Positions 250 through 33,920 of a stretch of DNA of 64,000 nt are shown one piece after another. The translations under genes were made by a program, and so were the position numbers. Where the stretch lies: NCBI GenBank assembly GCA_965112735.1, contig OZ218953.1:3658001-3722000 (forward strand), in the 5' to 3' direction. Origin of the DNA: Phaeosaccion multiseriatum (Eukaryota; Protista; Ochrophyta, other classes). Position 1 is the first letter of the stretch, and every line of letters starts with the position of its first letter. Under the pieces are notes generated by a model, which had not been told where the DNA came from, did no database searches, and saw only the letters and a list, made by a program, of their open reading frames with translations.

Positions 250-3056
250 GCGATGAACGCCCTCACGGAGGGGCGCATGGCAACGTATGATCTCCCTCCC
301 GGCCTGCGTAGTGAGTTCACCAAGGCCGAGATCGAGACGCTCATGGTCAACTTCGGCCTCTTTGACGACTCCGGGGACGGCGCCATCGACGAGGGTGAGA
401 GTTGGAGGAAGGAGGGGTAAGGGGAATAGGGCCATGATAGCACAAGCGCGAGGAGGTGGGGTGTTGGGTTGGGCTCGACTTCTGAGGGCTTTCGCCGAGG
501 CGTTTCGTACGCCCGCTTCCGCCACACAGCTACGGCTACAGGGACGCCCGCCCTTCTCTCTTCATGCAAGCGTAACGCCCCCTCCCCTACCTCTCCCTCC
601 CTCCTCCTTCCTCCTCCCTCCTCCTCCCTCCTCCTCCCTCCTCCGCCCTCCTCCTCCCTCCTCCTCCCTCCCCCTCCCTCCTCCGCCGTCCTCCCTCCTC
701 CTCCTCCTCCTCCTCCTCCTCCTCCTCCTCCGCCGTCCTCCTCCTCTTCCTCCTCCTCCTCCTCCTCCTCCTCCTCCTCCTCCTCCTCCTCCTCCTCCTC
801 CTCCTCCTCCTCCTCCTCCTCCTCCTCCTCCTCCTCCTCCTCCTCCTTCTCCTTCTCCTCCTCCTCCTCCTCCTCCTCCTCCTCCTCCTCCTCCTCCTCC
901 TCCTCCTCCTCCTCCTCCTCCTCCCTTCTCCGCCTCCCTCCTCTTCCTCCTCCTCTCCCTCCCTGCAGTGGAGTTGGAGCAGCTTCTGAGGAACTTTGGT
1001 CAGAACCCCACCAAAGAGAAGGTGAGCGAACTTGTGCTAACATGCGAAGGACACCATTTTCTGTATCACCAACGGGTACCCAAGGAGGGGCGAACAGATG
1101 GAGGGCACGCCTGGAGGGCACGCCTGCTGACTAAACGCTTGCTGATTTCACTTCTTCGCTTCTGTAACCGACCGATCAACCGGTCGCGTGTCTACCCTAC
1201 CCCTACCCCTACCCGTGCTGTGTGTGTGTTTGTGCGTTTGCGGATGCGTGCGTGTGTGCGTGCGCATGCCCCGTAGGTACACGAGGTGATGGAGGAGATT
1301 GACTACGACCGAAACGGCACCATCGACTTTAAAGAGTTTGCAGCCCTCATGCTCAAGGTCAGGGACGGGCTTGTTGACTTGGACGACTCCGCTTTCGGCA
1401 GGGCAGTCATGAACAGTGCAACGGCCAGTCTGCTCAGCGGGCAGGTCAGCAGGCTGCAGGAGCCGGAGCATGCGGTGAGTGAGCGAGGAGGAGGAGGGGA
1501 AGGAGAAGGAGGGCTCTTGAACCGAAATCGAACCTCTGCCGCTCATGGAGGAGCTTGTTCTGTCCCCTTGCCCCTCTGCTGACTTGTGACCCTCTGCTGC
1601 CTTCCTCCCCCTGACAGGTGGAATGGTGTGGCCCTTATCGCATCACCGCAGTGCGGCCGGCAACGTGCGATGTGTGCGTGAGGGGCCCGGCGGGGAGTGT
1701 GTACGAGGGGGGCACCTTCCGCCTCGAGATCATCGTCAACGACGGTTTCCCCTACGTGCCCCCCCACGTCAAGTTCCGAAACAGGTACGGGTCGTAGTAG
1801 CACATAGGGTGGGGGGGGGGGGTTGAGGTGTACAGGTCTGTGCCTGCTGACGGTCAGCACATGACGGATGGGTGCCTCTTTCTTTCTTTCACATTCCTCT
1901 CTCCTCGTGTCCTTGATGGCGACCTCTGTATCGCCTCGGAAACCTGTTCATCCCTTCGACTGCCATCGATCGCAGCGCCCCCCTCCCTCCTGAGCACCAT
2001 CCCCATCTCCCTCATCCCCTCTCCTTGGCCATGTGAGTCCGTGGATCGACGACCCACGGGCTCGCTTTATTTTCGCCTTGCCCACCCACCACAACCCCGC
2101 CCTGTGCATGTGCGCGTATGTGTATGTGTACTCTTGCCCCCCCCCTCCTTCTCCTCCTCCTCCTCCTCCTCCTCCTCCTCCTCCTCCTCCTCCTCCTCCT
2201 CCTCCTCCTCCTCCTCCTCCTCCTCCTCCTCCTCCTCCTCCTCAGGATGTTCCACCTCAACTTTAACATGCTCCTGGACGGTAGTACGGGCGTGGCCCAG
2301 CTGCTGGACCTCTGGACGGCTTCCTGGGATCTCGAAATACTGCTCAGGCGCATCGTTGATCTGATGAAGGTGGGCGAGGGAATGGACTAGAGAGAGGGAG
2401 GGAACCAGAAAGGGGGTGGGTGATGGGGGAGTGGGCGAGTATGTGGATGAGTGAGTGGGTGAGTAAGTGAGTGCGTGAGTGACTGGGTGAGGTGTGTGGG
2501 CGAGGGAGTGAGTGAGTGAGTGAATGAGTATTGACTTCTCGTATGTGCGCAATCTCCGTCAACGGTCTTCCACTTGCAAGACCGTCGCGGCGCTGCTCGT
2601 GGCCGCCCCACCGCCACCCGCCGCCCCGTCTGTTGCCATCCCTCTGGCCGCCCCGTCTGTTGCCATCGCTCTGGGGATACACAGAAAAAGAAGAGAACGA
2701 ACCAATGACCAAAAGGCACCACCCAACACCCTCAAACTCAAACCCTTCCTTGCCCCTGGACTCTGTGCTCCGCCCTCCAGGAGCCCGACCCGTCCCTTCT
2801 CCCCTCTGACCTCAGCGCGCTTGCTGCCCCGCCGACCCAAGCACACGGCCCAAGACAGGACCTTCGAGAGAAGAAGCGCTCCGGGCAGCTCGCAGCGCAA
2901 GTGGCCTCAATGTACTTCTCACAGAGGGAGGCGTATGACCAAACGGCACGGAGGTTTGCGGCCCTCTCCATCGCTCCGGGGTCTTTCAAAGCGGAGGAGT
3001 CCGACAAGGCGGAGGGGTACAGCGAGGCGGAGGGGGGAGACGAGGAGAAGCAATGA
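250..3056 (+). CDS. EF-hand pair (calmodulin N-lobe-like) fused to a ubiquitin-conjugating-enzyme-like domain lacking the catalytic Cys (UEV-type); probably 5'-partial
   Basis: GT-AG exons 250-394, 969-1021, 1277-1474, 1618-1784, 2246-2369 and 2781-3056 join in frame (963 nt). EF loops are DDSGDGAIDEVE and DYDRNGTIDFKE. UBC motifs are GPAGSVYEGGTFRLEI..FPYVPPHVKF, FHLN (for HPN), W..SW, EPDP and YDQTARRF. A (CCCT)n tract and an AG acceptor upstream imply earlier exons outside the window. Confidence 0.85.
585..960. repeat. (CCT)n intronic microsatellite; similar arrays at 2150-2243 and 47857-47930
   Basis: Pure CCT arrays lie immediately 5' of AG acceptors and generate the spurious poly-E/P/S/L/R ORFs. 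Confidence 0.95.
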
Positions 3057-4262
3057 GCCCTCCTGAGGAGCAAGCACTGGACAGGGTTGATCAGTCTTGA
3101 CAGGGTTGAACAGTGACCTTAATGGGCCGGACAGGGTTGAACAGTGACCTTAATGGGCCGTGAGCACGGTGATGGAGCAGCGGGCTGAGGCAGTGACGCA
3201 GTGGACGGGCTGTGAGGCACGAGCCTGACTGTAGGCCGGCGCTCGGAGACGCTCGGCAGTCTGTGCTGGACTGGTGGGTCGTGCCCTCCCCTTCCTTCCT
3301 TCCTTCCTTCCTTCCTTCCTTCCTTCCTTCCTTCCTTCCTTCCTTCCTTCCTTCCTTCCTACCTTCCTTCCTTCCCCACATACTGCAGCGAAGTGCGGCG
3401 CGTTGAGTTGAAATTGGGCAGGTCACAGGATTGAGAGAGAGAGAGGAGGACGCTTGTCAAGTCGGTCGGCTCCCTTTGCCCTCCGGGGTCTTTGAGCGAA
3501 GCGCTTACACCCGTGGGCGGTACTCGCCGAGGGCCCTGTACAGGGACAGAGAGGAAGTTTGTGCGATCAATTGATGGCTTGGTCGGTCGGTCGGTCGGTC
3601 GGAGTTGAGTCGTTCCAAAGTTGCCTCTCTCGAGCGATCCATTGGATCGATTGGGGGTACGACGGCTCCAGTTTTGTTCTTCCTTCTCTGCCCTCCACCC
3701 TTTATTGCCTATCCGAGGGCGGCGGACGGTTTCGCTTCCCCGCCATCCCCTTCCCCCACCCCCTCCCGACTAGTGTGGGTCCCGACTAGTGTGAGCCAGG
3801 ATCACGGCCAGGAAGGATCAGAATCAGGGTCAGATAAAGAATCAGGGTTGCGATCAGGATCAGGCTCGAAGCCTGCCAGCAAGCAAGTGGGAGCAAGCGG
3901 GAGCGGGGCATGGAGCACCAGTGACGTTCAGAGCCCACGCCCCCCCCCCCCTCGGTGAGCGCTCGTGAGGTGATCTTTGTGCTCTGCCCGTGAGTAAGTG
4001 GAACGAGCGACGAACTGTTCGGGAAGAGCGCGGAGGCAGCAGGCACATGGAATAGCACGGTCTATTATCACTTCTGCATAGGTCTGAGAGGTAGATAATT
4101 ATCATAAAAGCGTGTACATACATTATGGCTTTGAGAAATACTTGTAGGAAATAGGGTTCGTTTCTATCTGCAACGAACGTTCATCTTCTCAGATGAAAGC
4201 CGCAGCACCAGCGGTGGCCCCTCACTTCCCCCCCCCGCCTGCCCCCATGTAAAAGCCAAGAC

Positions 4263-4650
4263 TCAACACCTAGCGAAGACGAGTTCATAGAGAAGGAGGA
4301 GGTGCACCACCCCCGCGTAGCCGAGGAGCACCGCCCACACCTGCTCCTGAGGCTGCCTCTTGATGGCCGCAGCCGCCGAGGGCCAGTGCTGGGAGAGCAG
4401 CGGCCACAAAGGGTTGCGCACGCAGAGCGTGTTTCCCGGCTTGGCATCGTGCTCTGAATCCTCCGACCGTGGCTCCCCCATTTGGCCCGACTGCCCTAAA
4501 CCGCCCTCCTCGAGGTCGTGGAAGTGTCTACCGCTGCTCCGACTCGCGCGTTGGAAGGCGGCGCTGGGGGAGGGCGTGGGGGGCAAGGCGTCCAAGGGGG
4601 AGGAGAGGGCAACTTTATCGCCCTCCAGCTTCGGCGCCTCTCGCGTTGCG

Positions 4651-4686
<36 letters not shown>

Positions 4687-7600
4687 GACACCAACTGCTG
4701 TTGCTGCTGCTGCGCTTGGGCCAGGCGCTCCTTCAACCGTGACACCTCACTCTCCGCCTCTGTCTGGCCTGCGGCGGCCGCCCTCAGAGCCTCGGTAGCG
4801 CGGCGCAGGGCCGTCTGCGAGGTCGTCGCCATCTGCACTGCCTTGGCCCCGCTCTCCTCCAGCACCGCCAACAGCCTTGCCGCCCCCTCTTGCCCAGAGA
4901 CTGCCTCTGCCTGCTCCTCCTGCAAGCGACACCTCAGCTGCTGCACCTGCTGCACAACACCCGTCGATCCACTGCCCCCCCCTTCCACTTGCTCCACTTG
5001 GCCTTGGCTTTGGCGGTGGTCCTCATCCGCAGGAGCCTCCGTGCTGCGTTCGAGCCCCTCCCCTCCCCCCACCACGGCAGGAGCAGTTGAGTCCGCGGTG
5101 GCGGCGGCGGCGAGTGCACCGGCCACACGCCGCAGCCCCTCGCTCAGACGTTTCCCCGCCGCCTCTCTGCTCCCCGCTGTCTCCCGCAGCAGACCCGACA
5201 GAGCCACGAGCTCGGCGCACACCTCGGTCTTGTCTCTTTGCATGGCCCCGAGCTCCTCCATGAGCCGTGCCCCCTCCGCCACTGCCTGGGCCTGGGCCTG
5301 CTCGAGGGCCGCAGCTACCGCATCTCGCTCTTCGTTCGTCGTCGCCAACAGCGCATGCGCTTCCTTGAGCTGCGTCTCCAGTCCACCAACGCTAGCTTGC
5401 GCGCGCTTCTCCTCAATGGCCCGGGCGAGGGCGGCGTGCTTCTCCTTTCGAGAGTCTTTCACACCTTGCTCAGCCTCGGCCAAACGAGACTCCAATGTGG
5501 TCCTTACCGTCACCATCTCCTCCTCCAAGGCGGTACAACGCGCCTGAGCCTCGAGTAAGGCGGCGTTGCCCTCCTCTCTCTCCCTTCTGCCGGCCTCCAG
5601 TTGCGCGCCATCTGCCTCCATCTGAATCTCGACCTCCTCCACACGCCGAACCAGAGCCTCCTCTCTGTCCCTCACACTCTGTAGCTCGGTGCAGTGCTCC
5701 TGTGCCCTCGCCGCCCACTCTTGCTCCTTTGCGCCCAAGGCCTCAGCCTCTGCTTGTAAGCGTCGCTGCCCTTCTACAGCCTCGTCCCTTTGCTTCCGCA
5801 CCACTTGCACCTCCTCTACAGCCTCTGCCACTTGAGCCTCTAGCTGTGTCCTCAGTGTAACGAGCTCGAGCTGGGCCTGCTCCTCCCTCGCCTCCCGCTC
5901 TGCCGCAGCTTCGCCCAACTCACGCTCGACCTTCTCTAGATGCGTCGCCAGCGCAGCCTCTCGGCCTCTCGCCTCTTCGAGCTCAGCGCCTCGTTCTTCC
6001 ACTGCCTTCTGCAGCGCCTCCACCTCAGCCTTCAACATCAGACTTTGCTTCTCGGCCTCGTCACTCTGCTGCAGAGTCTCTCTCGACTGCTCCAGCTGCT
6101 TCAGCACATCGTCGTGGGTCCTCTGCAGCTCAGTTAGCTCCTCTGTGACCGACGACATGCGCTGGGCTGCCTCCTCCTCCACTTCCTCCAGGCGCGTCGC
6201 CAGCACAGCCTCTCGGCCTCTCGCCTCTTCGAGCTCAGCGCCTCGTTCCTCCACTGCCTTCTGCAGCGCCTCCACCTCAGCCTTCAACATCAGACTTTGC
6301 TTCTCGGCCTCGTCACTCTGCTGCAGAGTCTCTCTCGACTGCTCCAGCTGCTTCAGCACATCGTCGTGGGTCCTCCGTAGCTCAGTTAGCTCCTCTGTGA
6401 CCGATGACATGCGCTGGGCTGCCTCCTCCTCCACCTCCTCCAGGCGCGTCGCCACCGCAGCCTCTCGGCCTCTTGCCTCTTCGAGCTCAGCGCCTCGTTC
6501 CTCCACTGCCTTTTGCAGCGCCTCCACCTCAGCCTTCAACATCAGACTTTGCTTCTCGGCCTCGTCACTCTGCTGCAGAGTCTCTCTCGACTGCTCCAGC
6601 TGCTTCAGCACATCGTCGTGGGTCCTCTGCAGCTCCGTCAGCTCCTCTAAACGTTGGCGTGCCTCGTCTCTCTCTCTTTGCAGTTCCTCCTTCAGCTGTT
6701 CGCTCTCAGCCTCGTACTCCGTGTTACGCGCTTGAGCCTCTGTCAGCGCTTCTTTGATTGTCTTCCACTCTCCAGCCAAGTCATCCAATTGCTCGCGCTG
6801 TATCTCTTCGCTCCTGAGGAGAGCTCTTAAGCGCTCAATTTCACCCTCACCCTCGCTGGTCCGCTGATTTGCCTCTTCCAACCCAGCTCTCAACTCCCCC
6901 ACTTCCGCATTGGCTCTCCCAAGACTCTCCCTCGCCACCACCAAGTCTTGCTCCAGTCCAGACAAGCCGAGCGCCTCTCCCTTCTCCTTCTCCACACCGG
7001 CAGCCTCCGTCTGCTCTTTTGCAGCCAGCACGGAATCCAGCTCTGTTTGCTTGGCCTCCACTTCCTGCTCCTTGTTCCTGAGTTGGCTCTCCAGGCTCGC
7101 CATCTGCGTGCGAAGGTTTCCAAGCTGCTCCGTGGTAGAGGCCATCTCCTCCCGCACAGCCTCTCCAGCCACCCTCCACTCCTCCGCCTTGTCCTTCTCA
7201 CTGTGCAGCTGCTCTTCCACCGCAACCAACAAGCCCCCCTTGGCCTGTGCATCGGCCTCAGCGACCTCCAGTCGCGTCCTAAGCTCGTCCACCTCAACAC
7301 CCCGAGCCTCCATCTCTTGCTCCGCCCCCGCCAGAGCACTCCGGGCCGCCTCGAGGTCCCCAGACACAGCGTCAAGCCGCTCCTGCCCAGCGTCCTGCCC
7401 AGCGATCCGGTCCTCCAGCTCCTTCACTTGGCCGTCAGCACTCTCCGCTCGGAGGGTGACCTCCTTCAGTGCAGACACTGTACTCGACAACTCCGCCTGC
7501 GATGAGATTCGGTGGTTGGGTGGGTGAGATTGTGGTGGAAGTAGCCGTAGTGTATGAAGTAGTGAGCAGCGGAGAGGTGGGGGCAAGGAAGGGCGTGCAA

Positions 7601-25547: not shown

Positions 25548-25703
25548 TGGTGAAATTCGGGATCTCAAGCCTTGCTCCAGGCTTCTTTTGGTGGTGATAC
25601 ACTTACTGGCTCACAAATGCCGTCCCGTTACAGAAATTTTCTCTTTTCTCGGCTTTCTCGTTAGGGGAACCCACACACCGCAAGCAAGGGCAGGAGCGGG
25701 CCC

Positions 25704-28700
25704 ATGCAAGCACCAAGACCGAAGGTCATGAATGACCATAGCGGAGAGAGCTCCAGGAGTCGGATTCGTCTGCTGTTGCCAGTGGCGCTGCTAATCTCGC
25801 TCTCTGCCCCCGCCGCGGCGTCCACCACGTCCAACAGCTCCCATAGCTCCGGCAGCAGCGGCATGAGCGCCGAGATTCACTTTGGCACCAACAAGACCGA
25901 CACCCTCAGCGGGGGAAGCGACTCCGGCATGGACATTCTCTTTGGGTTAGAGGGGAGTGACAACATCCAAGCAGGAGGCGGGCCCTATAACATGTGAGTG
26001 TCACCACAAGTATGCACCCTGCCTCCCTGCAAGCTCTACGGGCTTCCTCCCACTCATTGACTGATTGAGTGTAAGGCTTGCTTACACTCCCACCTCGTCT
26101 CTCTCAGCGTGTTTGGCGGAGGGGGCGATGATGTGATACAAGGAGGCAATGGCAACGACTACCTCATGGGCAACTCGGGATCTGTAAGTGCCACACGTTG
26201 GCTGATACATGTGCATTCCAACGCGCTGTCCCGTCCGAGGAGAGAAAGTCGAACGTCGCACCCCTCACTTTACATTGCGTCTTCTCTTGCATGTCCATCC
26301 CCTCTTTGTGCTCCTTCACATCTCTGCAGGACTATCTCGCCGGCCACTCCGGCTCTGGTACGTGCTTCTCTCCTCGCTCTTGAGCATACACGCTTGGTGT
26401 TGTGGATTGACCCCGGAGGAGGAATCGCTTGCTTCTTCGATACTCGCCACCACTCCATCGCCACTGTTTCCCCTTCTTTCAACGCCCCTCGTCGATCACA
26501 TACTTACCGCGCTCATGAGCTAAAGCCCTTCTGCCCCCCGCCGCTGGCACTCCTCCGGCTGCTGCGTCTCTTCCTCCTCCATCTTCTCGTGCCCTTCCCC
26601 AGACGTGCTCAATGGAGGAGACGGGACTGACATTCTCAGTGGTCAGGGCGGAGACGGTGAGTGAAGGAAATGTGCTTCTTACGGAGGGCAGAGGAGGGCT
26701 GCTCAGGCATGGCATTAACCACAGCTACCGGGGTCAATGTGCCTCAACCCTGGCTCCATTCGTCGCCACCATGTGCTGCTTCCGCTCCTCCTCTCGCTAT
26801 CTCACACAGACGTACTCGTCGGCGGTGCTGGCTACGACTATCTCCATGGAGGCAGCGGTGACGGTGAGTGAGCACGCGACAGAGCCTCGCTGGGTATAGC
26901 CTTGTTTGGCATGTGTAGGCCCGAGCTACTTCCCTTGGCTTGTGGGCGAGTCGCCTGCTGACCTGCGGCAGTGCGTGCAGCTGCAAAGGACCTGACACCC
27001 TCTACTGCAGTGGAGTGCAAGTCGGCTCATTCTGTATCCCCCTGCGTGTGCGGTCCTCGTGCCTGTTCCTGCGAGCAGATGTTTTGCTGGGCGGTGCCGG
27101 CCATGATCGGCTGTACGGTAGTGAAGGAGCAGGTGAGAGAGGAGCGCTTCCGAGCAGAAGAGGAGGAGGAAGAGCCGCGGTGGACATCAGAGGGTGTAGT
27201 AACGAGCCGTTTGTTCTTGCTCTGTAGGGCATGGTGCTCTCTCTGTCCTAAGCGTCTCTTACTCACACGTCCTCCCTGCTCCTCCGTGCTCCTCCCTGCT
27301 CCAGACATCTTCGTGCTGACGGCGGCCATCATCAACTCCGCCACTACCTTCTCGTCGGTAAGGAGCTTACAGCAGAGAAAGCCCAACACCGCTTGCAGTG
27401 CCCAACCTTGCACGCGCCATGCTCCTCCGGCCTCACTCGGCTCACTCTGCTTACCGCATACCCGGCTTCTGCCTCCTCCCCACGCTCTTTCCTCTCTCGC
27501 TCCGACCGCTCTACGCTGTCTCAGGCGCCGAACTATATTCAAGACTTCGACATGGCGGAAGGAGACTTGCTCTGTCTGCCCGAGGGAAGCACCTTCAACG
27601 ACCTCACAACTACGTTCACCCCGTCCGACTGGGGAATTAATGTACTCGACGCAAACGGCAAGGAGCTGGCCGTCCTGGTGGGCGAGCATCGCTTCCCCTC
27701 CTCTGCGGCCTTCATAAACTGCACCAGCATGCTCCAAGAGCTCCCGCTGGGGGACTACTCGAGCCTGCCCTCCGACTTCGCAGGCTTCGGCGAGAGCAAT
27801 CGCTCCACGACCTATGGCAGCTGGTCCACTTCGTACAACGGAAGCCACTGGAGCAGCACTCACAACTGGACGCCAAGCTACCCCTCCTCGTACAACACGA
27901 CCACGAGCAGCAGTAGTAGCAGCAGCAGCAGCAGCATGAGCGCCGAGATTCACTTTGGCACCAACAAGAGCGACACCCTCAGCGGGGGAAGCGACTCCGG
28001 CATGGACATCCTCTATGGGTTAGAGGGGAATGACAACATCACAGCAGGAGGCGGGCTCTATAACATGTGAGTGTCACCACAAGTATGCACCCTGCCTCCC
28101 TGCAAGCTCTACGGGCTTCCTCCCACTCATTGACTGATTGATTGTATGGCTTGCTTGCACTCCCACCTCGTCTCTCTCAGCGTGTTTGGCGGAGGGGGCA
28201 ATGATATGATACAAGGAGGCGATGGCAACGACTACCTCATGGGCAACTCGGGATTTGTAAGTGCCACACGTTGGCCTTGCACGCGATAGCTGTGCATTCC
28301 TACGCACTGTGCAGTCCGAGAAGAGACACGCGAACGTCGCACCCCTCACTTTACATTGCGTCTTCTCTTGCATGTCCATCCCCTCTTTGTGCTACTTCAC
28401 ATCACTGCAGGACGTTATCTCCGGCCACTCCGGCACTGGTACGTGCTTCTCTCCTCGCTCTTGAGCATGCAGACTTGGTGTTGTGGATTACCCCCGGGGG
28501 AGGAATCTCTTGCTTCTTCGATACTCGCCACCACTCCATCGCCACTGTTTCCCATTCTTTCAACACCACTCGTCAGTCTCCTCGCCGATCACATGCGTAC
28601 CGCTCTTGAGCTGAAGCCCTTCTGCCCCCCGCCGCTGGTACTCCTCCGGCTGCTGCGTCTCTTCCTCCTCCATCTTCTCGTGCCCTTCCCCAGACGTACT

Positions 28701-31700
28701 CAATGGAGGAGACGGGAGTGACTTTCTCAAGGGTCAGGAGGGAGATGGTAAGTGAAGGAAATGTGCTTCTTACGGAGGGCAGAGGAGGGCTGCTCAGGCA
28801 TGGCATCGACCACAGCTACCGGGGTCAATGTGCCTCAACCCTGGCTCCATTCGTCGCCACCATGTGCTGCTTCCGCTCCTCCTCTCGCTATCTCACACAG
28901 ACGTACTCGTCGGCGGTGCTGGCTACGACTATCTCCATGGAGGCAGCGGTGACGGTGAGTGAGCACGCGACAGAGCCTCGCTGGGTATAGCCTTGTTTGG
29001 CATGTGTAGGCCCGAGCTACTTCCCTTGGCTTGTGGGCGAGTCGCCTGCTGACCTGCGGCAGTGCGTGCAGCTGCAAAGGACCTGACACCCTCTACTGCA
29101 GTGGAGTGCAAGTCGGCTCATTCTGTATCCCCCTGCGTGTGCGGTCCTCGTGCCTGTTCCTGCGAGCAGATGTTTTGCTGGGCGGTGCCGGCCATGATCG
29201 GCTGTACGGTAGTGAAGGAGCAGGTGAGAGAGGAGCGCTTCTGAGCAGAAGAGGGGGAGGAAGAGCCGCGGTGGACATCAGAGGGTGTAGTAACGAGCCG
29301 TTTGTTCTTGCTCTGTAGGGCATGGTGCTCTCTCTGTCCTAAGCGTCTCTTACTCACACGTCCTCCCTGCTCCTCCGTGCTCCTCCCTGCTCCAGACATC
29401 TTCGTGCTGACGGCGGCCATCACCAACTCCGCCACTACCTTCTCGTCGGTAAGGAGCTTACAGCAGAGAAAGCCCAACACCGCTTGCAGTGCCCAACCTT
29501 GCACGCGCCATGCTCCTCCGGCCTCACTCGGCTCACTCTGCTTACCGCATACCCGGCTTCTGCCTCCTCCCCACGCTCTTTCCTCTCTCGCTCCGACCGC
29601 TCTACGCTGTCTCAGGCGCCGAACTATATTCAAGACTTCGACATGGCGGAAGGAGACTTGCTCTGTCTGCCCGAGGGAAGCACCTTCAACGACCTCACAA
29701 CTACGTTCACCCCGTCCGACTGGGGAATTAATGTACTCGACGCAAACGGCAAGGAGCTGGCCGTCCTGGTGGGCGAGCATCGCCTCCCCTCCTCTGCGGC
29801 CTTCATAAACTGCACCAGCATGCTCCAAGAGCTCCTGCTGGGGGAATACTCGAGCCTGCCCTCCGACTTCGCAGGCTTCGGCGAGAGCAATCGCTCCACG
29901 ACCTATGGCAGCTGGTCCACTTCGTACAACGGAAGCCACTGGAGCAGCACTTACAACTGGACGCCAAGCTACCCCTCCTCGTACAACACGACCACGAGCA
30001 GCAGTAGTAGTAGCAGCAGCAGCATGACCTCCACCACGAGCACCTACAATGAGTCCTCCACGACGTCCTCCCCGTCCTTCACAGCCCCTTGGACCCCAAC
30101 CATCCCCACCACCTACAACATGACAACATACACCACCAGCACGTACAACAGCACCAGCAGTAGCACCAGCACTCACAACTGGACGCCAAGCTACCCCTCC
30201 ACGTACAGCAGCTCCCATAGCTCCGGCAGCAGCGGCATGAGCGCCGAGATTCACTTTGGCACCAACGAGAGCGACACCCTGAGCGGGGGAAGCGACTCCG
30301 GCATGGACATCCTCTATGGGTTAGAGGGGAGTGACAGCATCAACGCAGGGGACGGGCCCTACAACATGTGAGTGTCACCACAAGTATGCATCCTGCCTCC
30401 CTGCAAGCTCTACGGGCTTCCTCCCACTCATTGACTGATTGTATGGCTTGCTTACACTCCCACCTCGTCTCTCTCAGCGTGTTTGGCGGAGGGGGCAATG
30501 ATGTGATACAAGGAGGCGATGGCAACGACTACCTCATGGGCAACTCGGGATCTGTAAGTGCCACACGTTGGCTGCAGTGCACGTGATACCTGTGCATTCC
30601 AACGCGCTGTCCCGTCCGAGGAGAGAAAGTCAAACGTCGCACCCCTCACTTTATATTGCGTCTTCTCTTGCGTGTCCATCCCCTCTTTGTGCTCCTTCAC
30701 ATCTCTGCAGGACTATCTCGCCGGCCACTCCGGCTCTGGTACGTGCTTCTCTCCTCGCTCATGAGCATACACGCTTGGTGTTGTGGATGGACCCCGGGGG
30801 AGGAATCGCTTGCTTCTTCGATACGGGCCACCACTCCATCGCCACTGTTTCCCCTTCTTTCAACGCCCCTCGTCTCACCCCTCGTCGATCACATACTTAC
30901 CGCTCATGAGCTAAAGCAAAGCTTTTCTGCCCCCCGCCGCTGGCACTCCTCCGGCTGCTGCGTCTCTTCCTCCTCCATCTTCTCGTGCCCATTCCCAGAC
31001 GTGCTCAATGGAGGAGACGGGACTGACACTCTCAGTGGTCAGGGCGGAGACGGTGAGTGAAGACAATGTGCTTCCTACGGAGGGCAGAGGAGGGCTGCTC
31101 AGGCATGGCATTAACCACAGCTACCGGGGTCAATGTGCCTCAACCCTTGCTCCTTCTGTGGCCACCACTTGCTGCTTCCCCTCCTCCTCTCGCTATCTCA
31201 CACAGACGTACTCGTCGGCGGTCCTGGCTCGGATCGTCTCTATGGAGGCAGCGGTGACGGTGAGTGAGCACGCGACAGAGCCTCGCTGGGTTTAGCCTCG
31301 TTTGGTATGTGTAGGCCCGAGCTACTTCCCTTGGCTTGTGGGCGAGTCGCCGGCTGACCTGCGGCAGTACGTGCAGCTGCAAAGGACCTGACACCCTCTA
31401 CTGTAGTGGAGTGCAAGTCGGCTCATTCTGTACCCCTCTGTGTGTGCGGCCCTCGTGCCTCTTCCTACGAGCAGATGTCTTGCTGGGCGGTGCCGGCTAT
31501 GATAGTCTGTACGGCAGTGAAGGAGCAGGTGAGAGAGGGGCGCTTCCGAGCAGAAGAAGGCGAGAAAGAGCCGCGGTGGATATCACAGGGTGTAGTAACG
31601 AGCCTTTTGTTCTTGCTCTGTAGGGCATGGTGCTCTCTCTGTCCTAAGCGTCTCTTACTCACACGTCCTCCCTGCTCCTCCGTGCTCCTCCCTGCTCCAG

Positions 31701-33273
31701 ACATCTTCGTGCTGACGGCGGCCATCACCAACTCCACCTCTACCAGCTCGAGGGTAAGAAGGAGCCCAAAGCAGAGAAAGCCCAACACCGCTTGAAGTGC
31801 CCAACCTTGCACGCGCCATGCTCCTCCGGCCTCACTCGGCTCACTCTGCTTACCGCATACCCGGCTTCTGCCTCCTCCCCACGCTCTTTCCTCTCTCGCT
31901 CCGACCGCTCTACGCTGTCTCAGGCGCCGAACTATATTCAAGACTTCAACATGACGGAAGGAGACTTGCTCTGTCTGCCCGAAGGAAGCACCTTCAACGA
32001 TCTCACAACTGCGACTGCCTTGACCGGGACCAACGATGTGCTCGTACGCGACGCAAACGGCAAGAAGCTGGCTTGGGTGAAGGACCACACTCACCTCACC
32101 TCTGCGGCCTTCATGAACTGCACCAGCATGCTCCAAGAGCTCCTGCTGGGGGAATACTCGAGCCTGCCCTCCGACTTCGCAGGCTTCGGCGAGAGCAATC
32201 GCTCCACGACCTATGGCAGCTGGTCCACTTCGTACAACGGAAGCCACTGGAGCAGCACTCACAACTGGACGCCAAGCTACCCCTCCTCGTACAACACGAC
32301 CACGAGCAGCAGTAGTAGTAGCAGCAGCAGCATGACCTCCACCACGAGCACCTACAATGAGTCCTCCACGACGTCCTCCCCGTCCTTCACAGCCCCTTGG
32401 ACCCCAACCATCCCCACCACCTACAACATGACAACATACACCACCAGCACGTACAACAGCACCAGCAGTAGCACCAGCACCAGCACCAGCACCAGCACCA
32501 GCACCAGCACCAGCAGCAGCACCACCACCACCACCAGCACCAGCACCACTCCAGCACCAACGCCCGCACCTATCCCCGCCACCCCAGCGCCCACCCTTGC
32601 CCCAGTGGCTCCTGCGCCAACGCCTGTCCCGGTCCTTCTTACCCCAGCACCGACGCCTGCTCCCGTCGCAACCACCCCCCCGCCAACGCGCAAAGTCCCC
32701 GTGTGGGTCAAACCAACGCCCGCCCCTACCGCGCCCAAGCCAACCTTCGCACCCACGCCTGCCCCCACCACTGCCCCGACCGCCGCCCCGACTGTGAAAC
32801 GGACGAGGGCTCCCACCATGGCCCCGACTCCCGCGCCGACGAGTGCGGCTCCGACGCCGGCGCCCACAGCAATTCGGAGGTGCATCTGCACGTGCACAGA
32901 GCAGGGTGAGTTCGGCGATAGTGGGGTAAGAGTGGGGTCGTGGGGCGGGAGTGACTTCCCTGCGTGGCTGTGGCTGTGGCTGTGGCTGTGGCTGTGGCTG
33001 TGGCTGTGGCTGTGGCTGTCGCTGGGCTATGCCTGGGCTGTGGCCGGGGCTCACTGTCTGCTATGTATGCCTTTGGGTCGTATCGACTATGAGCTTTCCC
33101 TCCCCTCGGGCCCGCCCCCGGTGTGGCACCGCTTGCTCGGACGCAGAAGTCCGCCGTGCCCTTTCACCATTGATCACCTTCCTCCACCCTCTGACTCAAC
33201 CTGTCCAATCCCCCATTCACCACCCTCCTCCGCCCTCTGACTTAATCTCTGCAATCCCATCGACTTGCTTGCT

Positions 33274-33305
<32 letters not shown>

Positions 33306-33920
33306 TCTCTCTCTCTCTCGCACTCACTCACACACACACACACAGGCGGCTGCTCTTGCCGATGCGGCCCCCCTCCGACACGTCTCCGCCGTCTGGCCCC
33401 TCGCACCCGCCTCTCCAGCCCCCGACACGCGCACGTGACGCTCACGACCCTCGTAGGGGCCGAGTCCATCACCAAAGAGGACTTCACCGAGGAGGCACAG
33501 GAGCACTTCTGCTGCGTCATTGCCAACGTCATTTCGGGGGTGCCGGGCGTGGATGTCGCTCTTCCTGCCCCTGCCCCTGCCCTTGCTCCTTCTAGTGGCA
33601 GGCTCGAGAGAGTCAGCAGTGAGGAGGAGGCCCTTCTAGTAGGGGAGGAGGAGGAGGAGGAAGAGGAGGCGACGATGAGCGTGAAGGTGATCGGGGTGGA
33701 CGAGCTCGAGGCGGACTACGTAACGCCCGAGGGGCAGCTCCTGTCGCAAGGATGGTTGCTCATGGTGAGCTTCGACGTGTTGGATCTGCCTGGAGAGGAC
33801 GACATAGACGAGGCCGTGAGCGACGAAGTGGTGGCGTCGATCCGCTTAGCCGAGGAGGACGGATCGTTGGCCGCAGAGCTCGAGGCGGAGGTTATTCGAG
33901 ACATGAGGACCGCCCTGTGA
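25704..33920 (+). CDS. Secreted RTX/hemolysin-type Ca2+-binding beta-roll protein: three beta-roll+cap modules, S/T-rich linkers, a P/T/A stalk, a Cys cluster and an acidic C-terminal domain (23 exons, ~1,365 aa)
   Basis: Exons 25704-25993; 26108-26183, 26330-26357, 26603-26656, 26810-26863, 27079-27132, 27305-27357; 27525-28066; 28181-28256, 28411-28438, 28694-28747, 28901-28954, 29170-29223, 29396-29448; 29616-30367; 30478-30553, 30711-30738, 30999-31052, 31206-31259, 31475-31528, 31701-31753; 31924-32905; 33346-33920. All are GT-AG and total 4,098 nt in one open frame. There are ~14 GGxGxDxL-type nonapeptides per module and a signal-like LLLPVALLISLSAPAAA. Confidence 0.88.
25863..32480 (+). 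repeat. Tandem triplication of a 2.1-2.3 kb unit, exons and introns included
   Basis: ATGAGCGCCGAGATTCAC recurs at 25863, 27936 and 30237 (periods 2,073 and 2,301 nt). Corresponding introns are highly similar between copies. Confidence 0.97.

What the first reader, a model, noticed from the sequence alone, without database searches (positions are those of the whole stretch)
26108..31753. RTX beta-roll encoded one coil per exon: symmetric 54-nt micro-exons with introns locked on the Ca2+-binding Asp
Seen: in each module, five consecutive introns fall at the same position of the GGxGxDxL nonapeptide, either just before or inside (G|AY) the conserved Asp codon. This yields a 28-nt exon and three 54-nt phase-1/1 exons (e.g. 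26603-26656, 26810-26863, 27079-27132), nine 54-nt exons in all. Known: two nonapeptides (18 aa) make one full turn of the parallel beta-roll, and one-repeat-per-exon organisation underlies shuffling of LRR/TPR genes in brown algae. Inference: any 54-nt exon can be skipped, duplicated or swapped without breaking frame or fold, giving a modular system for diversifying a Ca2+-dependent surface protein. I know of no such description for RTX repeats.
Basis: partly seen in the sequence, partly recalled or inferred. Interest (0 to 1): 0.82.

Follow-up and report, generated by a model that had tools for sequence, protein, structure and literature searches.

The report
RTX calcium-roll gene, one coil per exon
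A stramenopile alga has a gene for a secreted, sugar-coated protein whose bacterial-type calcium-binding RTX coils are each encoded by their own 54-base exon; the layout is real and apparently undescribed for RTX, but it looks like a by-product of repeat amplification, as in collagen genes, not a shown diversity machine.

Summary
One gene (25704-33920, + strand) stays open through 23 exons. Each of three 2.1-2.3 kb modules has RTX exons of 76, 28, 54, 54, 54 and 53 nt. Five consecutive GT-AG introns per module sit at the Asp6 codon of GGxGxDxLx: one in phase 0 and four as G|AY. There are nine 54-nt phase 1-1 exons.

No RNA could be reached. The four runs found are DNA-like and show no splice joints.

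The pattern is family-wide. All six RTX genes of this genome place every RTX-internal intron I could resolve at one of three nucleotide offsets: 15 or 16 (Asp6 codon) or 20 (codon 7). Four paralogs carry introns at 16 and 20 in one repeat, leaving a 4-nt exon. Exon sizes are 27, 54, 81, 108 or 135 nt.

This fits old introns copied along as repeats were amplified, as with collagen's 54-bp exon. The whole module was then triplicated recently.

Between modules, RTX exons diverge faster than introns (dN/dS 1.4-2.2), only at exposed x positions. Exon skipping or shuffling is possible but unshown.

The scan had already noted similar one-repeat-per-exon genes in this genome, including another RTX locus.

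The parts
25704..33920 (+). Whole gene model: 23 exons, about 1365 codons. It encodes a signal peptide, three RTX-plus-cap modules with Ser/Thr-rich linkers, a Thr/Pro-rich stalk, a short Cys-rich stretch and an acidic C-terminal part.
   Evidence: Frame tracking exon by exon; sequence. No RNA evidence.
25704..25993 (+). Exon 1: start codon, hydrophobic signal-peptide-like segment (LLLPVALLISLSAPAAAS) and the first degenerate RTX repeats. It ends in phase 2 in codon 7 of a repeat (AAC AT|).
   Evidence: PF00353 16 bits. The signal peptide is inferred by eye.
26108..26183 (+). Module 1, 76-nt exon (VFGGGGDDVIQGGNGNDYLMGNSGS), phase 2 to 0. The following intron lies just before the Asp codon.
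   Evidence: PF00353 31.4 bits, above the 23-bit cut-off.
26330..26357 (+). Module 1, 28-nt exon (DYLAGHSGS plus G of the split Asp), phase 0 to 1.
26603..26656 (+). Module 1, 54-nt exon a, phase 1-1: two nonapeptides, one beta-roll turn. It starts with AC and ends with G of split Asp codons.
26810..26863 (+). Module 1, 54-nt exon b, phase 1-1.
27079..27132 (+). Module 1, 54-nt exon c, phase 1-1.
27305..27357 (+). Module 1, 53-nt exon ((D)IFVLTAAIINSATTFSS), phase 1 to 0: last RTX strand and start of the cap.
27525..28066 (+). Module 1 large exon: cap with the family motif IxDFxxxxGDxxC, then a Ser/Thr/Asn-rich linker with NxS/T sites, then the first repeats of module 2.
   Evidence: No relatives in the protein, PDB or metagenome searches.
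28181..28256 (+). Module 2, 76-nt exon.
28411..28438 (+). Module 2, 28-nt exon.
28694..28747 (+). Module 2, 54-nt exon a.
28901..28954 (+). Module 2, 54-nt exon b (identical to module 1).
29170..29223 (+). Module 2, 54-nt exon c (identical to module 1).
29396..29448 (+). Module 2, 53-nt exon.
29616..30367 (+). Module 2 large exon: cap, a longer linker, and the start of module 3.
30478..30553 (+). Module 3, 76-nt exon.
30711..30738 (+). Module 3, 28-nt exon.
30999..31052 (+). Module 3, 54-nt exon a.
31206..31259 (+). Module 3, 54-nt exon b.
31475..31528 (+). Module 3, 54-nt exon c.
31701..31753 (+). Module 3, 53-nt exon.
31924..32905 (+). Module 3 large exon: cap (with a divergent patch at 31984-32100), Ser/Thr linker, Thr/Pro-rich stalk and the start of the Cys-rich stretch.
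33346..33920 (+). Probable last exon (Cys-rich stretch and acidic C-terminal part; stop TGA at 33918-33920). The acceptor was chosen by frame only.
   Evidence: open 190-aa translation accepted, with no Pfam family.

Best explanation
This is a real nuclear gene of a stramenopile alga. It encodes an ER-targeted, probably heavily glycosylated surface or matrix protein with three tandem RTX beta-roll modules, each about 14 nonapeptides plus a cap.

The periodic intron placement is inherited, not a device. The ancestor of this alga's six RTX genes already carried introns at two sites 4 nt apart, one inside the Asp6 codon and one 2 nt into codon 7. As the repeat arrays grew by internal duplication, exon-plus-intron units were copied together. 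Every exon therefore holds a whole number of nonapeptides and every intron sits at the same place in the repeat. This is the logic proposed for collagen's 54-bp exons.

In this gene the amplified unit was two nonapeptides, which is one coil. Later the whole 2.1-2.3 kb module was triplicated and is still being homogenised in patches. Exposed x residues of the RTX exons change faster than the introns.

Shown: the exon model, the family-wide positions, the young module copies, and exons diverging faster than introns.
Inferred: amplification by descent, secretion, Ca2+ binding, and the surface role.
For: - Exon model with an open frame and exact 27-nt periodicity across all introns.
- PF00353 above its cut-off on a single exon, and six RTX loci in the genome.
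- In all six loci, every RTX-internal intron I could resolve lies at offset 15/16 or 20 of the 27-nt repeat. Exons are 27, 54, 81, 108 or 135 nt.
- C3, C7, C10 and C11 each have exactly one candidate 4-nt exon of the form AG|AYNN|GTAAG between an offset-16 and an offset-20 intron.
- Exon 1 of this gene and of the C13 paralog ends with the same four bases, AC AT.
- All six loci share the cap motif IxDFxxxxGDxxC. In the three I read through (this gene, C13, C10) a phase-0 intron lies directly before the cap exon.
- Between modules the introns are 88-100% identical, which marks a young module triplication. Contigs in the DNA runs bridge the tandem junction.
- RTX exons against introns: 5.6 vs 3.0%, 6.9 vs 4.1% and 10.7 vs 6.9% differences. 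Nonsynonymous to synonymous codon changes are 13:2, 14:3 and 20:5. In the RTX repeats proper they fall at x positions, and no conserved Gly, Asp6 or hydrophobic position 8 changes. dN/dS is 1.4-2.2.
- Collagen precedent: PMC4450265.
Against: - Introns within a module show no similarity to one another (z below 2.3), and the same holds within the paralogs. Unit duplication therefore has no direct sequence trace and must be old.
- Intron positions counted in repeats from the cap match only partly between this gene and C13.
- No orthologue from another species could be fetched to date the introns.
- No RNA confirms any splice site.
- The excess of exon over intron divergence rests on small counts (Fisher p 0.03-0.05).
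Confidence: 0.6

Rival explanations
1. One reading: the symmetric 54-nt exons are cassettes that the alga actually uses. Through regulated exon skipping, inter-module splicing or frequent exon duplication and swapping, it would vary the length and surface of a Ca2+-dependent surface protein.
For: - Every small exon ends in G and the next starts with AY, so any combination is in frame and restores Asp.
- Paralogs differ in the number and size of such exons.
- Exposed residues change faster than introns.
- Brown-algal LRR/TPR genes with one repeat per exon are reported to shuffle exons and splice alternatively (PMC3341825, PMC11378527).
- Other scan notes describe similar exon arrays in this genome.
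Against: - No RNA data, so no isoform is known.
- All three modules keep the same six small exons.
- There are no near-identical single exons at different positions.
- There are no orphan RTX exons in the genome.
- The divergence seen is by point substitution, not by exon rearrangement.
Confidence: 0.15
2. Recurrent, site-directed intron gain. Introns were inserted independently many times at two preferred spots of the RTX coding motif (around GAY NN) after the RTX domain entered the eukaryote.
For: - Introns at equivalent positions share no sequence similarity.
- Only three of the 27 offsets are used in about 30 introns.
- The repeat index of the introns differs between this gene and C13.
- Both sites occur within one repeat in four paralogs.
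Against: - There is no introner-like family. The introns match nothing else in the genome.
- Exon edges show no common proto-splice sequence.
- The 4-nt exon sits at the same place, after exon 1, in four paralogs. The phase-0 intron before the cap recurs in the three loci I read through. Both are better explained by descent.
Confidence: 0.15
3. There is no functional gene. The model would be an artefact of reading GT-AG pairs into a decayed or mis-assembled RTX repeat region.
For: No transcript evidence. No protein of this gene or a close relative exists in 1.84 billion representatives.
Against: - The 23-exon frame is open in three diverged module copies.
- Every splice site is conserved in all three modules.
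- Changes avoid the Gly and Asp positions.
- Paralogs share the architecture.
- Independent contigs reproduce the sequence and the tandem junction.
Confidence: 0.05

Closest known systems
Bacterial RTX (HemolysinCabind, PF00353) parallel beta-roll, e.g. Pseudomonas alkaline protease (Baumann 1993, via review PMC3034196)
   Same: Tandem GGxGxDxUx nonapeptides. Two nonapeptides make one turn, and Asp6 is the side-chain Ca2+ ligand. A hydrophobic xFVL strand and a DF..GD cap-like motif follow the repeats. Pfam score is above the cut-off.
   Different: This is a eukaryotic nuclear gene with 22 introns and an N-terminal signal peptide instead of a C-terminal type I secretion signal. It also has N-glycosylation sites and mucin-like linkers. 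No toxin or enzyme domain was found. The cap has no detectable bacterial or PDB relative by sequence.
R-modules of Azotobacter AlgE mannuronan C-5 epimerases (PMC4444821)
   Same: One to four tandem modules, each with 4-7 RTX nonapeptides followed by a non-repeat part. They form elongated beta-helices that bind Ca2+ and alginate. This is a plausible functional analogue for an alga related to brown algae.
   Different: No sequence similarity beyond the nonapeptides, and no catalytic A-module here. Alginate binding is pure conjecture.
Fibrillar collagen genes with 54-bp exons (PMC4450265, PMC2852846)
   Same: The repeat domain is built from 54-bp (18-residue) exons, each holding a whole number of structural repeats. 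This is explained by amplification of an exon-plus-intron unit and unequal recombination.
   Different: Collagen exons start with a complete Gly codon (phase 0; my own knowledge, not checked here). Here the exons are phase 1-1 and split the Asp codon. The fold and lineage differ. Here there are only three such exons per module, and whole modules were duplicated.
Ectocarpus and brown-algal LRR-ROCO and NB-ARC-TPR genes with one repeat per exon (PMC3341825, PMC11378527)
   Same: Stramenopile genes in which each solenoid repeat has its own frame-neutral exon of fixed length. This layout permits exon shuffling and alternative splicing.
   Different: Those exons are described as multiples of 3 nt in 'phase 0', with EST support and documented exon indels. 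Here the repeats are extracellular RTX repeats of bacterial type in phase 1-1, and neither shuffling nor alternative splicing is shown.

Membership tests
RTX repeat / HemolysinCabind (PF00353) | Tandem nonapeptides GGxGxDxUx | tested here: met
   At least 10 regular nonapeptides plus about 4 degenerate ones per module, in exact 27-nt register across introns.
RTX repeat / HemolysinCabind (PF00353) | Profile score above Pfam's gathering threshold (23 bits) | tested here: met
   The 76-nt exon alone scores 31.4 bits. The six-frame genome search gives 28-31.6 bits at the three 76-nt exons and 17-24 bits at single 54-nt exons. The joined protein was not searched.
RTX repeat / HemolysinCabind (PF00353) | Ca2+-dependent folding into a parallel beta-roll | not testable with these tools
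   This needs the spliced protein. The joined model was left out by instruction, and there is no experiment.
RTX exoproteins in the strict sense (review PMC3034196) | Export by a type I secretion system through a C-terminal signal, in Gram-negative bacteria | tested here: not met
   This is an intron-rich eukaryotic gene with an N-terminal signal-peptide-like segment. It is an RTX-repeat protein, not an RTX exoprotein or toxin.
Repeat-per-exon genes built by exon amplification (collagen type; brown-algal LRR/TPR type) | Exon length equals a whole number of structural repeats, with symmetric intron phase | tested here: met
   Nine 54-nt phase 1-1 exons here. The paralogs have exons of 27, 54, 81, 108 and 135 nt.
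Repeat-per-exon genes built by exon amplification (collagen type; brown-algal LRR/TPR type) | Traces of exon-level duplication or shuffling: similar flanking introns, exon indels between copies | tested here: inconclusive
   Introns within a module are not alike. The three modules have identical exon sets. Paralogs do differ in exon number and size.
Repeat-per-exon genes built by exon amplification (collagen type; brown-algal LRR/TPR type) | Alternative splicing of the repeat exons | not testable with these tools
   No RNA run holds the locus. The four runs laid are DNA-like and show no joints.
Introner-type intron gain | Introns similar to each other and to many other loci in the genome | tested here: not met
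   A genome-wide DNA search with a whole module hits only the three modules plus simple Ser-codon repeats. Intron pairs score z below 2.3.

The most novel reading that the evidence does not exclude
This alga, and perhaps its relatives, may encode surface solenoid proteins coil by coil as a rule. RTX rolls here, and other beta-helix and Cys-repeat arrays noted elsewhere in the genome, use frame-neutral exons. Exon skipping, duplication or deletion, together with selection on exposed residues, would then tune the length and surface of these proteins. That would be a eukaryotic surface-variation system built partly on a domain of bacterial type. A second, independent novel reading is a site-specific mechanism of intron gain that targets two spots 4 nt apart in the RTX motif.
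Probability: 0.12. Interest if true: 0.75.

Novelty: new variant of a known kind. Interest (0 to 1): 0.5.

Why it matters
RTX beta-rolls are known almost entirely from intron-free bacterial genes. Here a eukaryote holds a six-gene RTX family in which every RTX-internal intron I could resolve sits at one of two spots 4 nt apart in the repeat. Four members even carry a 4-nt exon between those spots.

This gives a clean, countable system for an old question: do periodic introns in repeat genes arise by copying exon-plus-intron units, or by repeated gain? It also shows what a bacterial-type Ca2+-binding fold looks like once it is secreted through the ER and glycosylated.

If the frame-neutral exons turn out to be skipped or reshuffled, this would add a new kind of surface-protein variation in algae. 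As it stands, it is a tidy gene-structure finding without functional proof.

Tried and rejected
- **RNA evidence.** The single run search found four runs of one sample. All cover the introns and show no joints, so no splice site could be confirmed.
- **Word-based protein search** with the 180-aa large exon found nothing.
- **Exhaustive search of 1.84 billion representatives** gave ten hits. The five sequences I read carry Ig-like (Big_2-type) repeats, and the three named ones are Bacteroidales or Muribaculaceae Ig-like proteins. They match only a short 'VDANGK..' stretch. I rejected them as spurious.
- **Two metagenome scans and one bacterial-genome scan** with the cap found no confirmed relative. 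The six-sequence alignment was too divergent for the tool.
- **PDB sequence search** with the cap found nothing.
- **Introner hypothesis:** rejected.
- **Intronisation of former repeats:** I considered that the introns are decayed former repeats. Intron lengths are not multiples of 27, which argues against it. I did not search the introns for RTX remnants.
- **Outside donor for the divergent cap patch of module 3:** none found in the genome.
- **54-nt-exon pattern scan:** the full pattern was too long for the tool. The 31-place acceptor-side pattern gave 65 hits against 51 for the control. The excess is explained by the known RTX loci.
- All searches were made exon by exon, by reference, so folds of isoforms could not be predicted.
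The read-laying run used 2231 letters.
Full report
**What is there.** The window is nuclear DNA of a eukaryote: about 60% GC, GT-AG introns, a 67-Mb genome in 22 contigs. Earlier notes of this scan call it a stramenopile alga related to brown algae. I did not test its identity.

A gene starts at ATG 25704 and ends at TGA 33918-33920 on the + strand. Exon 1 encodes a hydrophobic, signal-peptide-like segment and the first degenerate RTX repeats. Three tandem modules of 2073, 2297 and about 2300 bp follow. After them come a Ser/Thr-rich and then Thr/Pro-rich stalk, a short Cys-rich stretch, one more intron and an acidic C-terminal part.

**Check of the observation.** I tracked the frame exon by exon and never built a joined protein. 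The frame stays open through 23 exons. Each module has exons of 76, 28, 54, 54, 54 and 53 nt plus one large exon of 542, 752 or 982 nt.

- The intron after the 76-nt exon lies in phase 0 directly before GAC.
- The next four introns split the Asp codon as G|AC or G|AT.
- All of these Asp residues are position 6 of GGxGxDxLx.

Further support for the model:
- A scan that required only open frames, plausible donors and a preserved 27-nt register, with no fixed offset, returned these same introns as the only solutions at the junctions it could resolve.
- Retained introns would give stops or frameshifts.
- The 76-nt exon alone scores 31.4 bits on PF00353 against a cut-off of 23.
- The RTX review PMC3034196 confirms that one turn of the beta-roll consists of two consecutive nonapeptides, and that the conserved Asp residues bind the calcium.

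'One coil per exon, intron on the Ca2+ ligand' is therefore a correct description of the model.

**Missing evidence.** Laid on 25650-27880, their contigs run through the introns and show no joints, so they behave as DNA.

The runs do reproduce the sequence. They include a contig that bridges from the end of one module back to a module start, as expected for tandem copies. Word depth in module-shared segments is 2-3 times that of the unique 5' flank, although the tool warns that depth is not copy number. No transcript evidence exists for any splice site.

**The pattern is family-wide.** A six-frame PF00353 search of the genome found six RTX loci: this one on C4, plus C3, C7, C10, C11 and C13. 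I fetched the other five and read them.

All six share one architecture: a short N-terminal hydrophobic leader (read in the sequence for this gene, C7, C10 and C13), RTX repeats, a strand such as xFVL, and a cap with the motif IxDFxxxxGDxxC. In the three I read through (this gene, C13, C10), a phase-0 intron lies just before the cap exon. They form one paralogous family.

Every RTX-internal intron I could resolve, about 30 not counting the module copies, falls at one of three of the 27 possible nucleotide offsets:
- Offset 20 (phase 2, in codon 7) in C7, C11, C3, C10 and C13, and in intron 1 of this gene.
- Offset 16 (G|AY in Asp6) in this gene, C13 and C10, and at the end of exon 1 of C3, C7 and C11.
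- Offset 15 (phase 0, before Asp6) once in this gene and once in C13.

Exon sizes across the family are 27, 54, 81, 108 and 135 nt. For example, C7 has exons of 4, 5, 4, 1 and 3 nonapeptides, and C13 has two 27-nt exons and a 55-nt exon.

In C3, C7, C10 and C11 the frame after exon 1 can be kept only by a 4-nt exon. Each gap holds exactly one candidate, AG|AYNN|GTAAG (ATAC, ACAC, ACAT, ACAT). It is flanked by an offset-16 intron and an offset-20 intron. Exon 1 of this gene and of C13 ends with the same four bases, AC AT.

Both intron sites therefore look ancestral to the family. 'Two nonapeptides per exon' is one value among several, not a family rule.

**How the pattern most likely arose.** The introns match nothing else in the genome, so there is no introner family. 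Within a module they are not similar to one another, and the same holds within the paralogs. Exon edges share no proto-splice sequence.

Positions conserved among paralogs argue for inheritance. The periodicity is most simply explained by old introns being carried along when repeats were amplified as exon-plus-intron units. This is the explanation given for collagen's 54-bp, 18-residue exons (PMC4450265).

I put this at about 0.6. The duplications have left no direct sequence trace, and I could not fetch any orthologue to date the introns. Recurrent gain at two preferred spots remains possible, at about 0.15.

**Young events and selection.** The three modules are recent copies. Introns are 88-100% identical between modules, in a mosaic: modules 1 and 2 are identical over their 3' halves, while modules 1 and 3 are nearly identical in the exons of their 5' halves. 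This fits unequal crossing-over or gene conversion.

The RTX exons differ more than the introns:

| Module pair | Exon differences | Intron differences | Nonsyn : syn codon changes |
|---|---|---|---|
| 1 vs 2 | 5.6% | 3.0% | 13 : 2 |
| 1 vs 3 | 6.9% | 4.1% | 14 : 3 |
| 2 vs 3 | 10.7% | 6.9% | 20 : 5 |

Fisher p is 0.03-0.05 and dN/dS is 1.4-2.2. In the RTX repeats proper the replacements fall at x positions, and no conserved Gly, Asp6 or hydrophobic position 8 changes; most in the 54-nt exons are at positions 3, 5, 7 or 9.

The cap of module 3 carries a 117-nt patch that is only 62-67% identical to the other modules, between flanks that are 95-100% identical. It has high dS as well, and no donor exists elsewhere in the genome.

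The counts are small. The direction agrees with what other agents reported for other repeat-per-exon arrays in this genome. It suggests diversification of exposed residues by substitution.

It is true that every small exon ends in G and the next begins with AY. Any skipping, duplication or swap would therefore stay in frame and restore Asp. Nothing shows that this happens:
- No RNA is available.
- The exon sets of the three modules are identical.
- There are no near-identical single exons at new positions.
- The Pfam and pattern scans found no orphan RTX exons.

I rate the cassette-system reading at about 0.15.

**Relatives and literature.** The large exon (cap plus linker) has no relative in the word search. 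It has only spurious hits to Ig-like repeat proteins, named ones from Bacteroidales or Muribaculaceae, among 1.84 billion representatives. The metagenome scans, the bacterial-genome scan and the PDB sequence search also found none.

Full-text searches found no paper on RTX repeats in an algal gene or on their exon structure.

The closest known cases are:
- the bacterial RTX beta-roll, for the fold;
- the AlgE R-modules, for modular RTX units that bind Ca2+ and alginate (PMC4444821);
- collagen's 54-bp exons;
- the brown-algal LRR/TPR genes with one repeat per exon (PMC3341825, PMC11378527).

**Verdict.** The finding is a new variant of a known kind of gene organisation, and this scan had already noted the same kind of layout on other DNA of this genome, including another RTX locus. 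Interest 0.5.

Noticed in passing
L034:5082-5085 (+); L031:7274-7277 (-); L035:5924-5927 (-); L033:8358-8361 (-): Four RTX paralogs (C10, C7, C3, C11) each need a 4-nt exon (ACAT, ACAC, ATAC, ACAT) to stay in frame after exon 1. In each gap it is the only AG-NNNN-GT candidate, and it lies between an intron in the Asp6 codon and an intron in codon 7. No RNA check was possible.
   Followed up: partly
window 31984-32100, compared with 27585-27701 and 29676-29792: The cap of module 3 holds a patch only 62-67% identical to modules 1 and 2. The flanks, including introns, are 95-100% identical. Both dS and dN are high (about 0.3), and no donor copy exists elsewhere in the genome. It is either an old segment spared by homogenisation or was imported from a lost copy.
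   Followed up: partly
L031 (minus strand), reverse-complement positions 3580-4349 and 5315-6084: Two introns of the C7 RTX gene are both exactly 770 nt long but show no sequence similarity (z = 0.1). They might hide further tiny exons, as the neighbouring 776-nt gap does: it holds a 27-nt exon at reverse-complement positions 4840-4866.
   Followed up: no
G000:C4:554039-554069 (-), C5:1838930-1838960 (-), C12:527223-527253 (+), C6:842370-842400 (-): The acceptor-plus-nonapeptide pattern also hit a few places outside the six RTX loci that read like RTX repeats (for example DIISGGSGTD). They may be chance matches, since the control pattern gave 51 hits against 65, or further short RTX-like exons.
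   Followed up: no
L033 (C11 locus), reverse-complement positions about 2350-4300: The C11 RTX gene region contains very long Ser-codon and Pro-codon runs, hundreds of codons open in frame, between RTX exons. It is unclear whether they are coding linkers or intronic microsatellites.
   Followed up: no
window 32960-33020 and 33270-33345: The last intron of the gene holds a (GGCTGT)n microsatellite and CT/CA dinucleotide runs directly before the acceptor that I chose by frame. The border of the last exon is the least certain part of the model.
   Followed up: no
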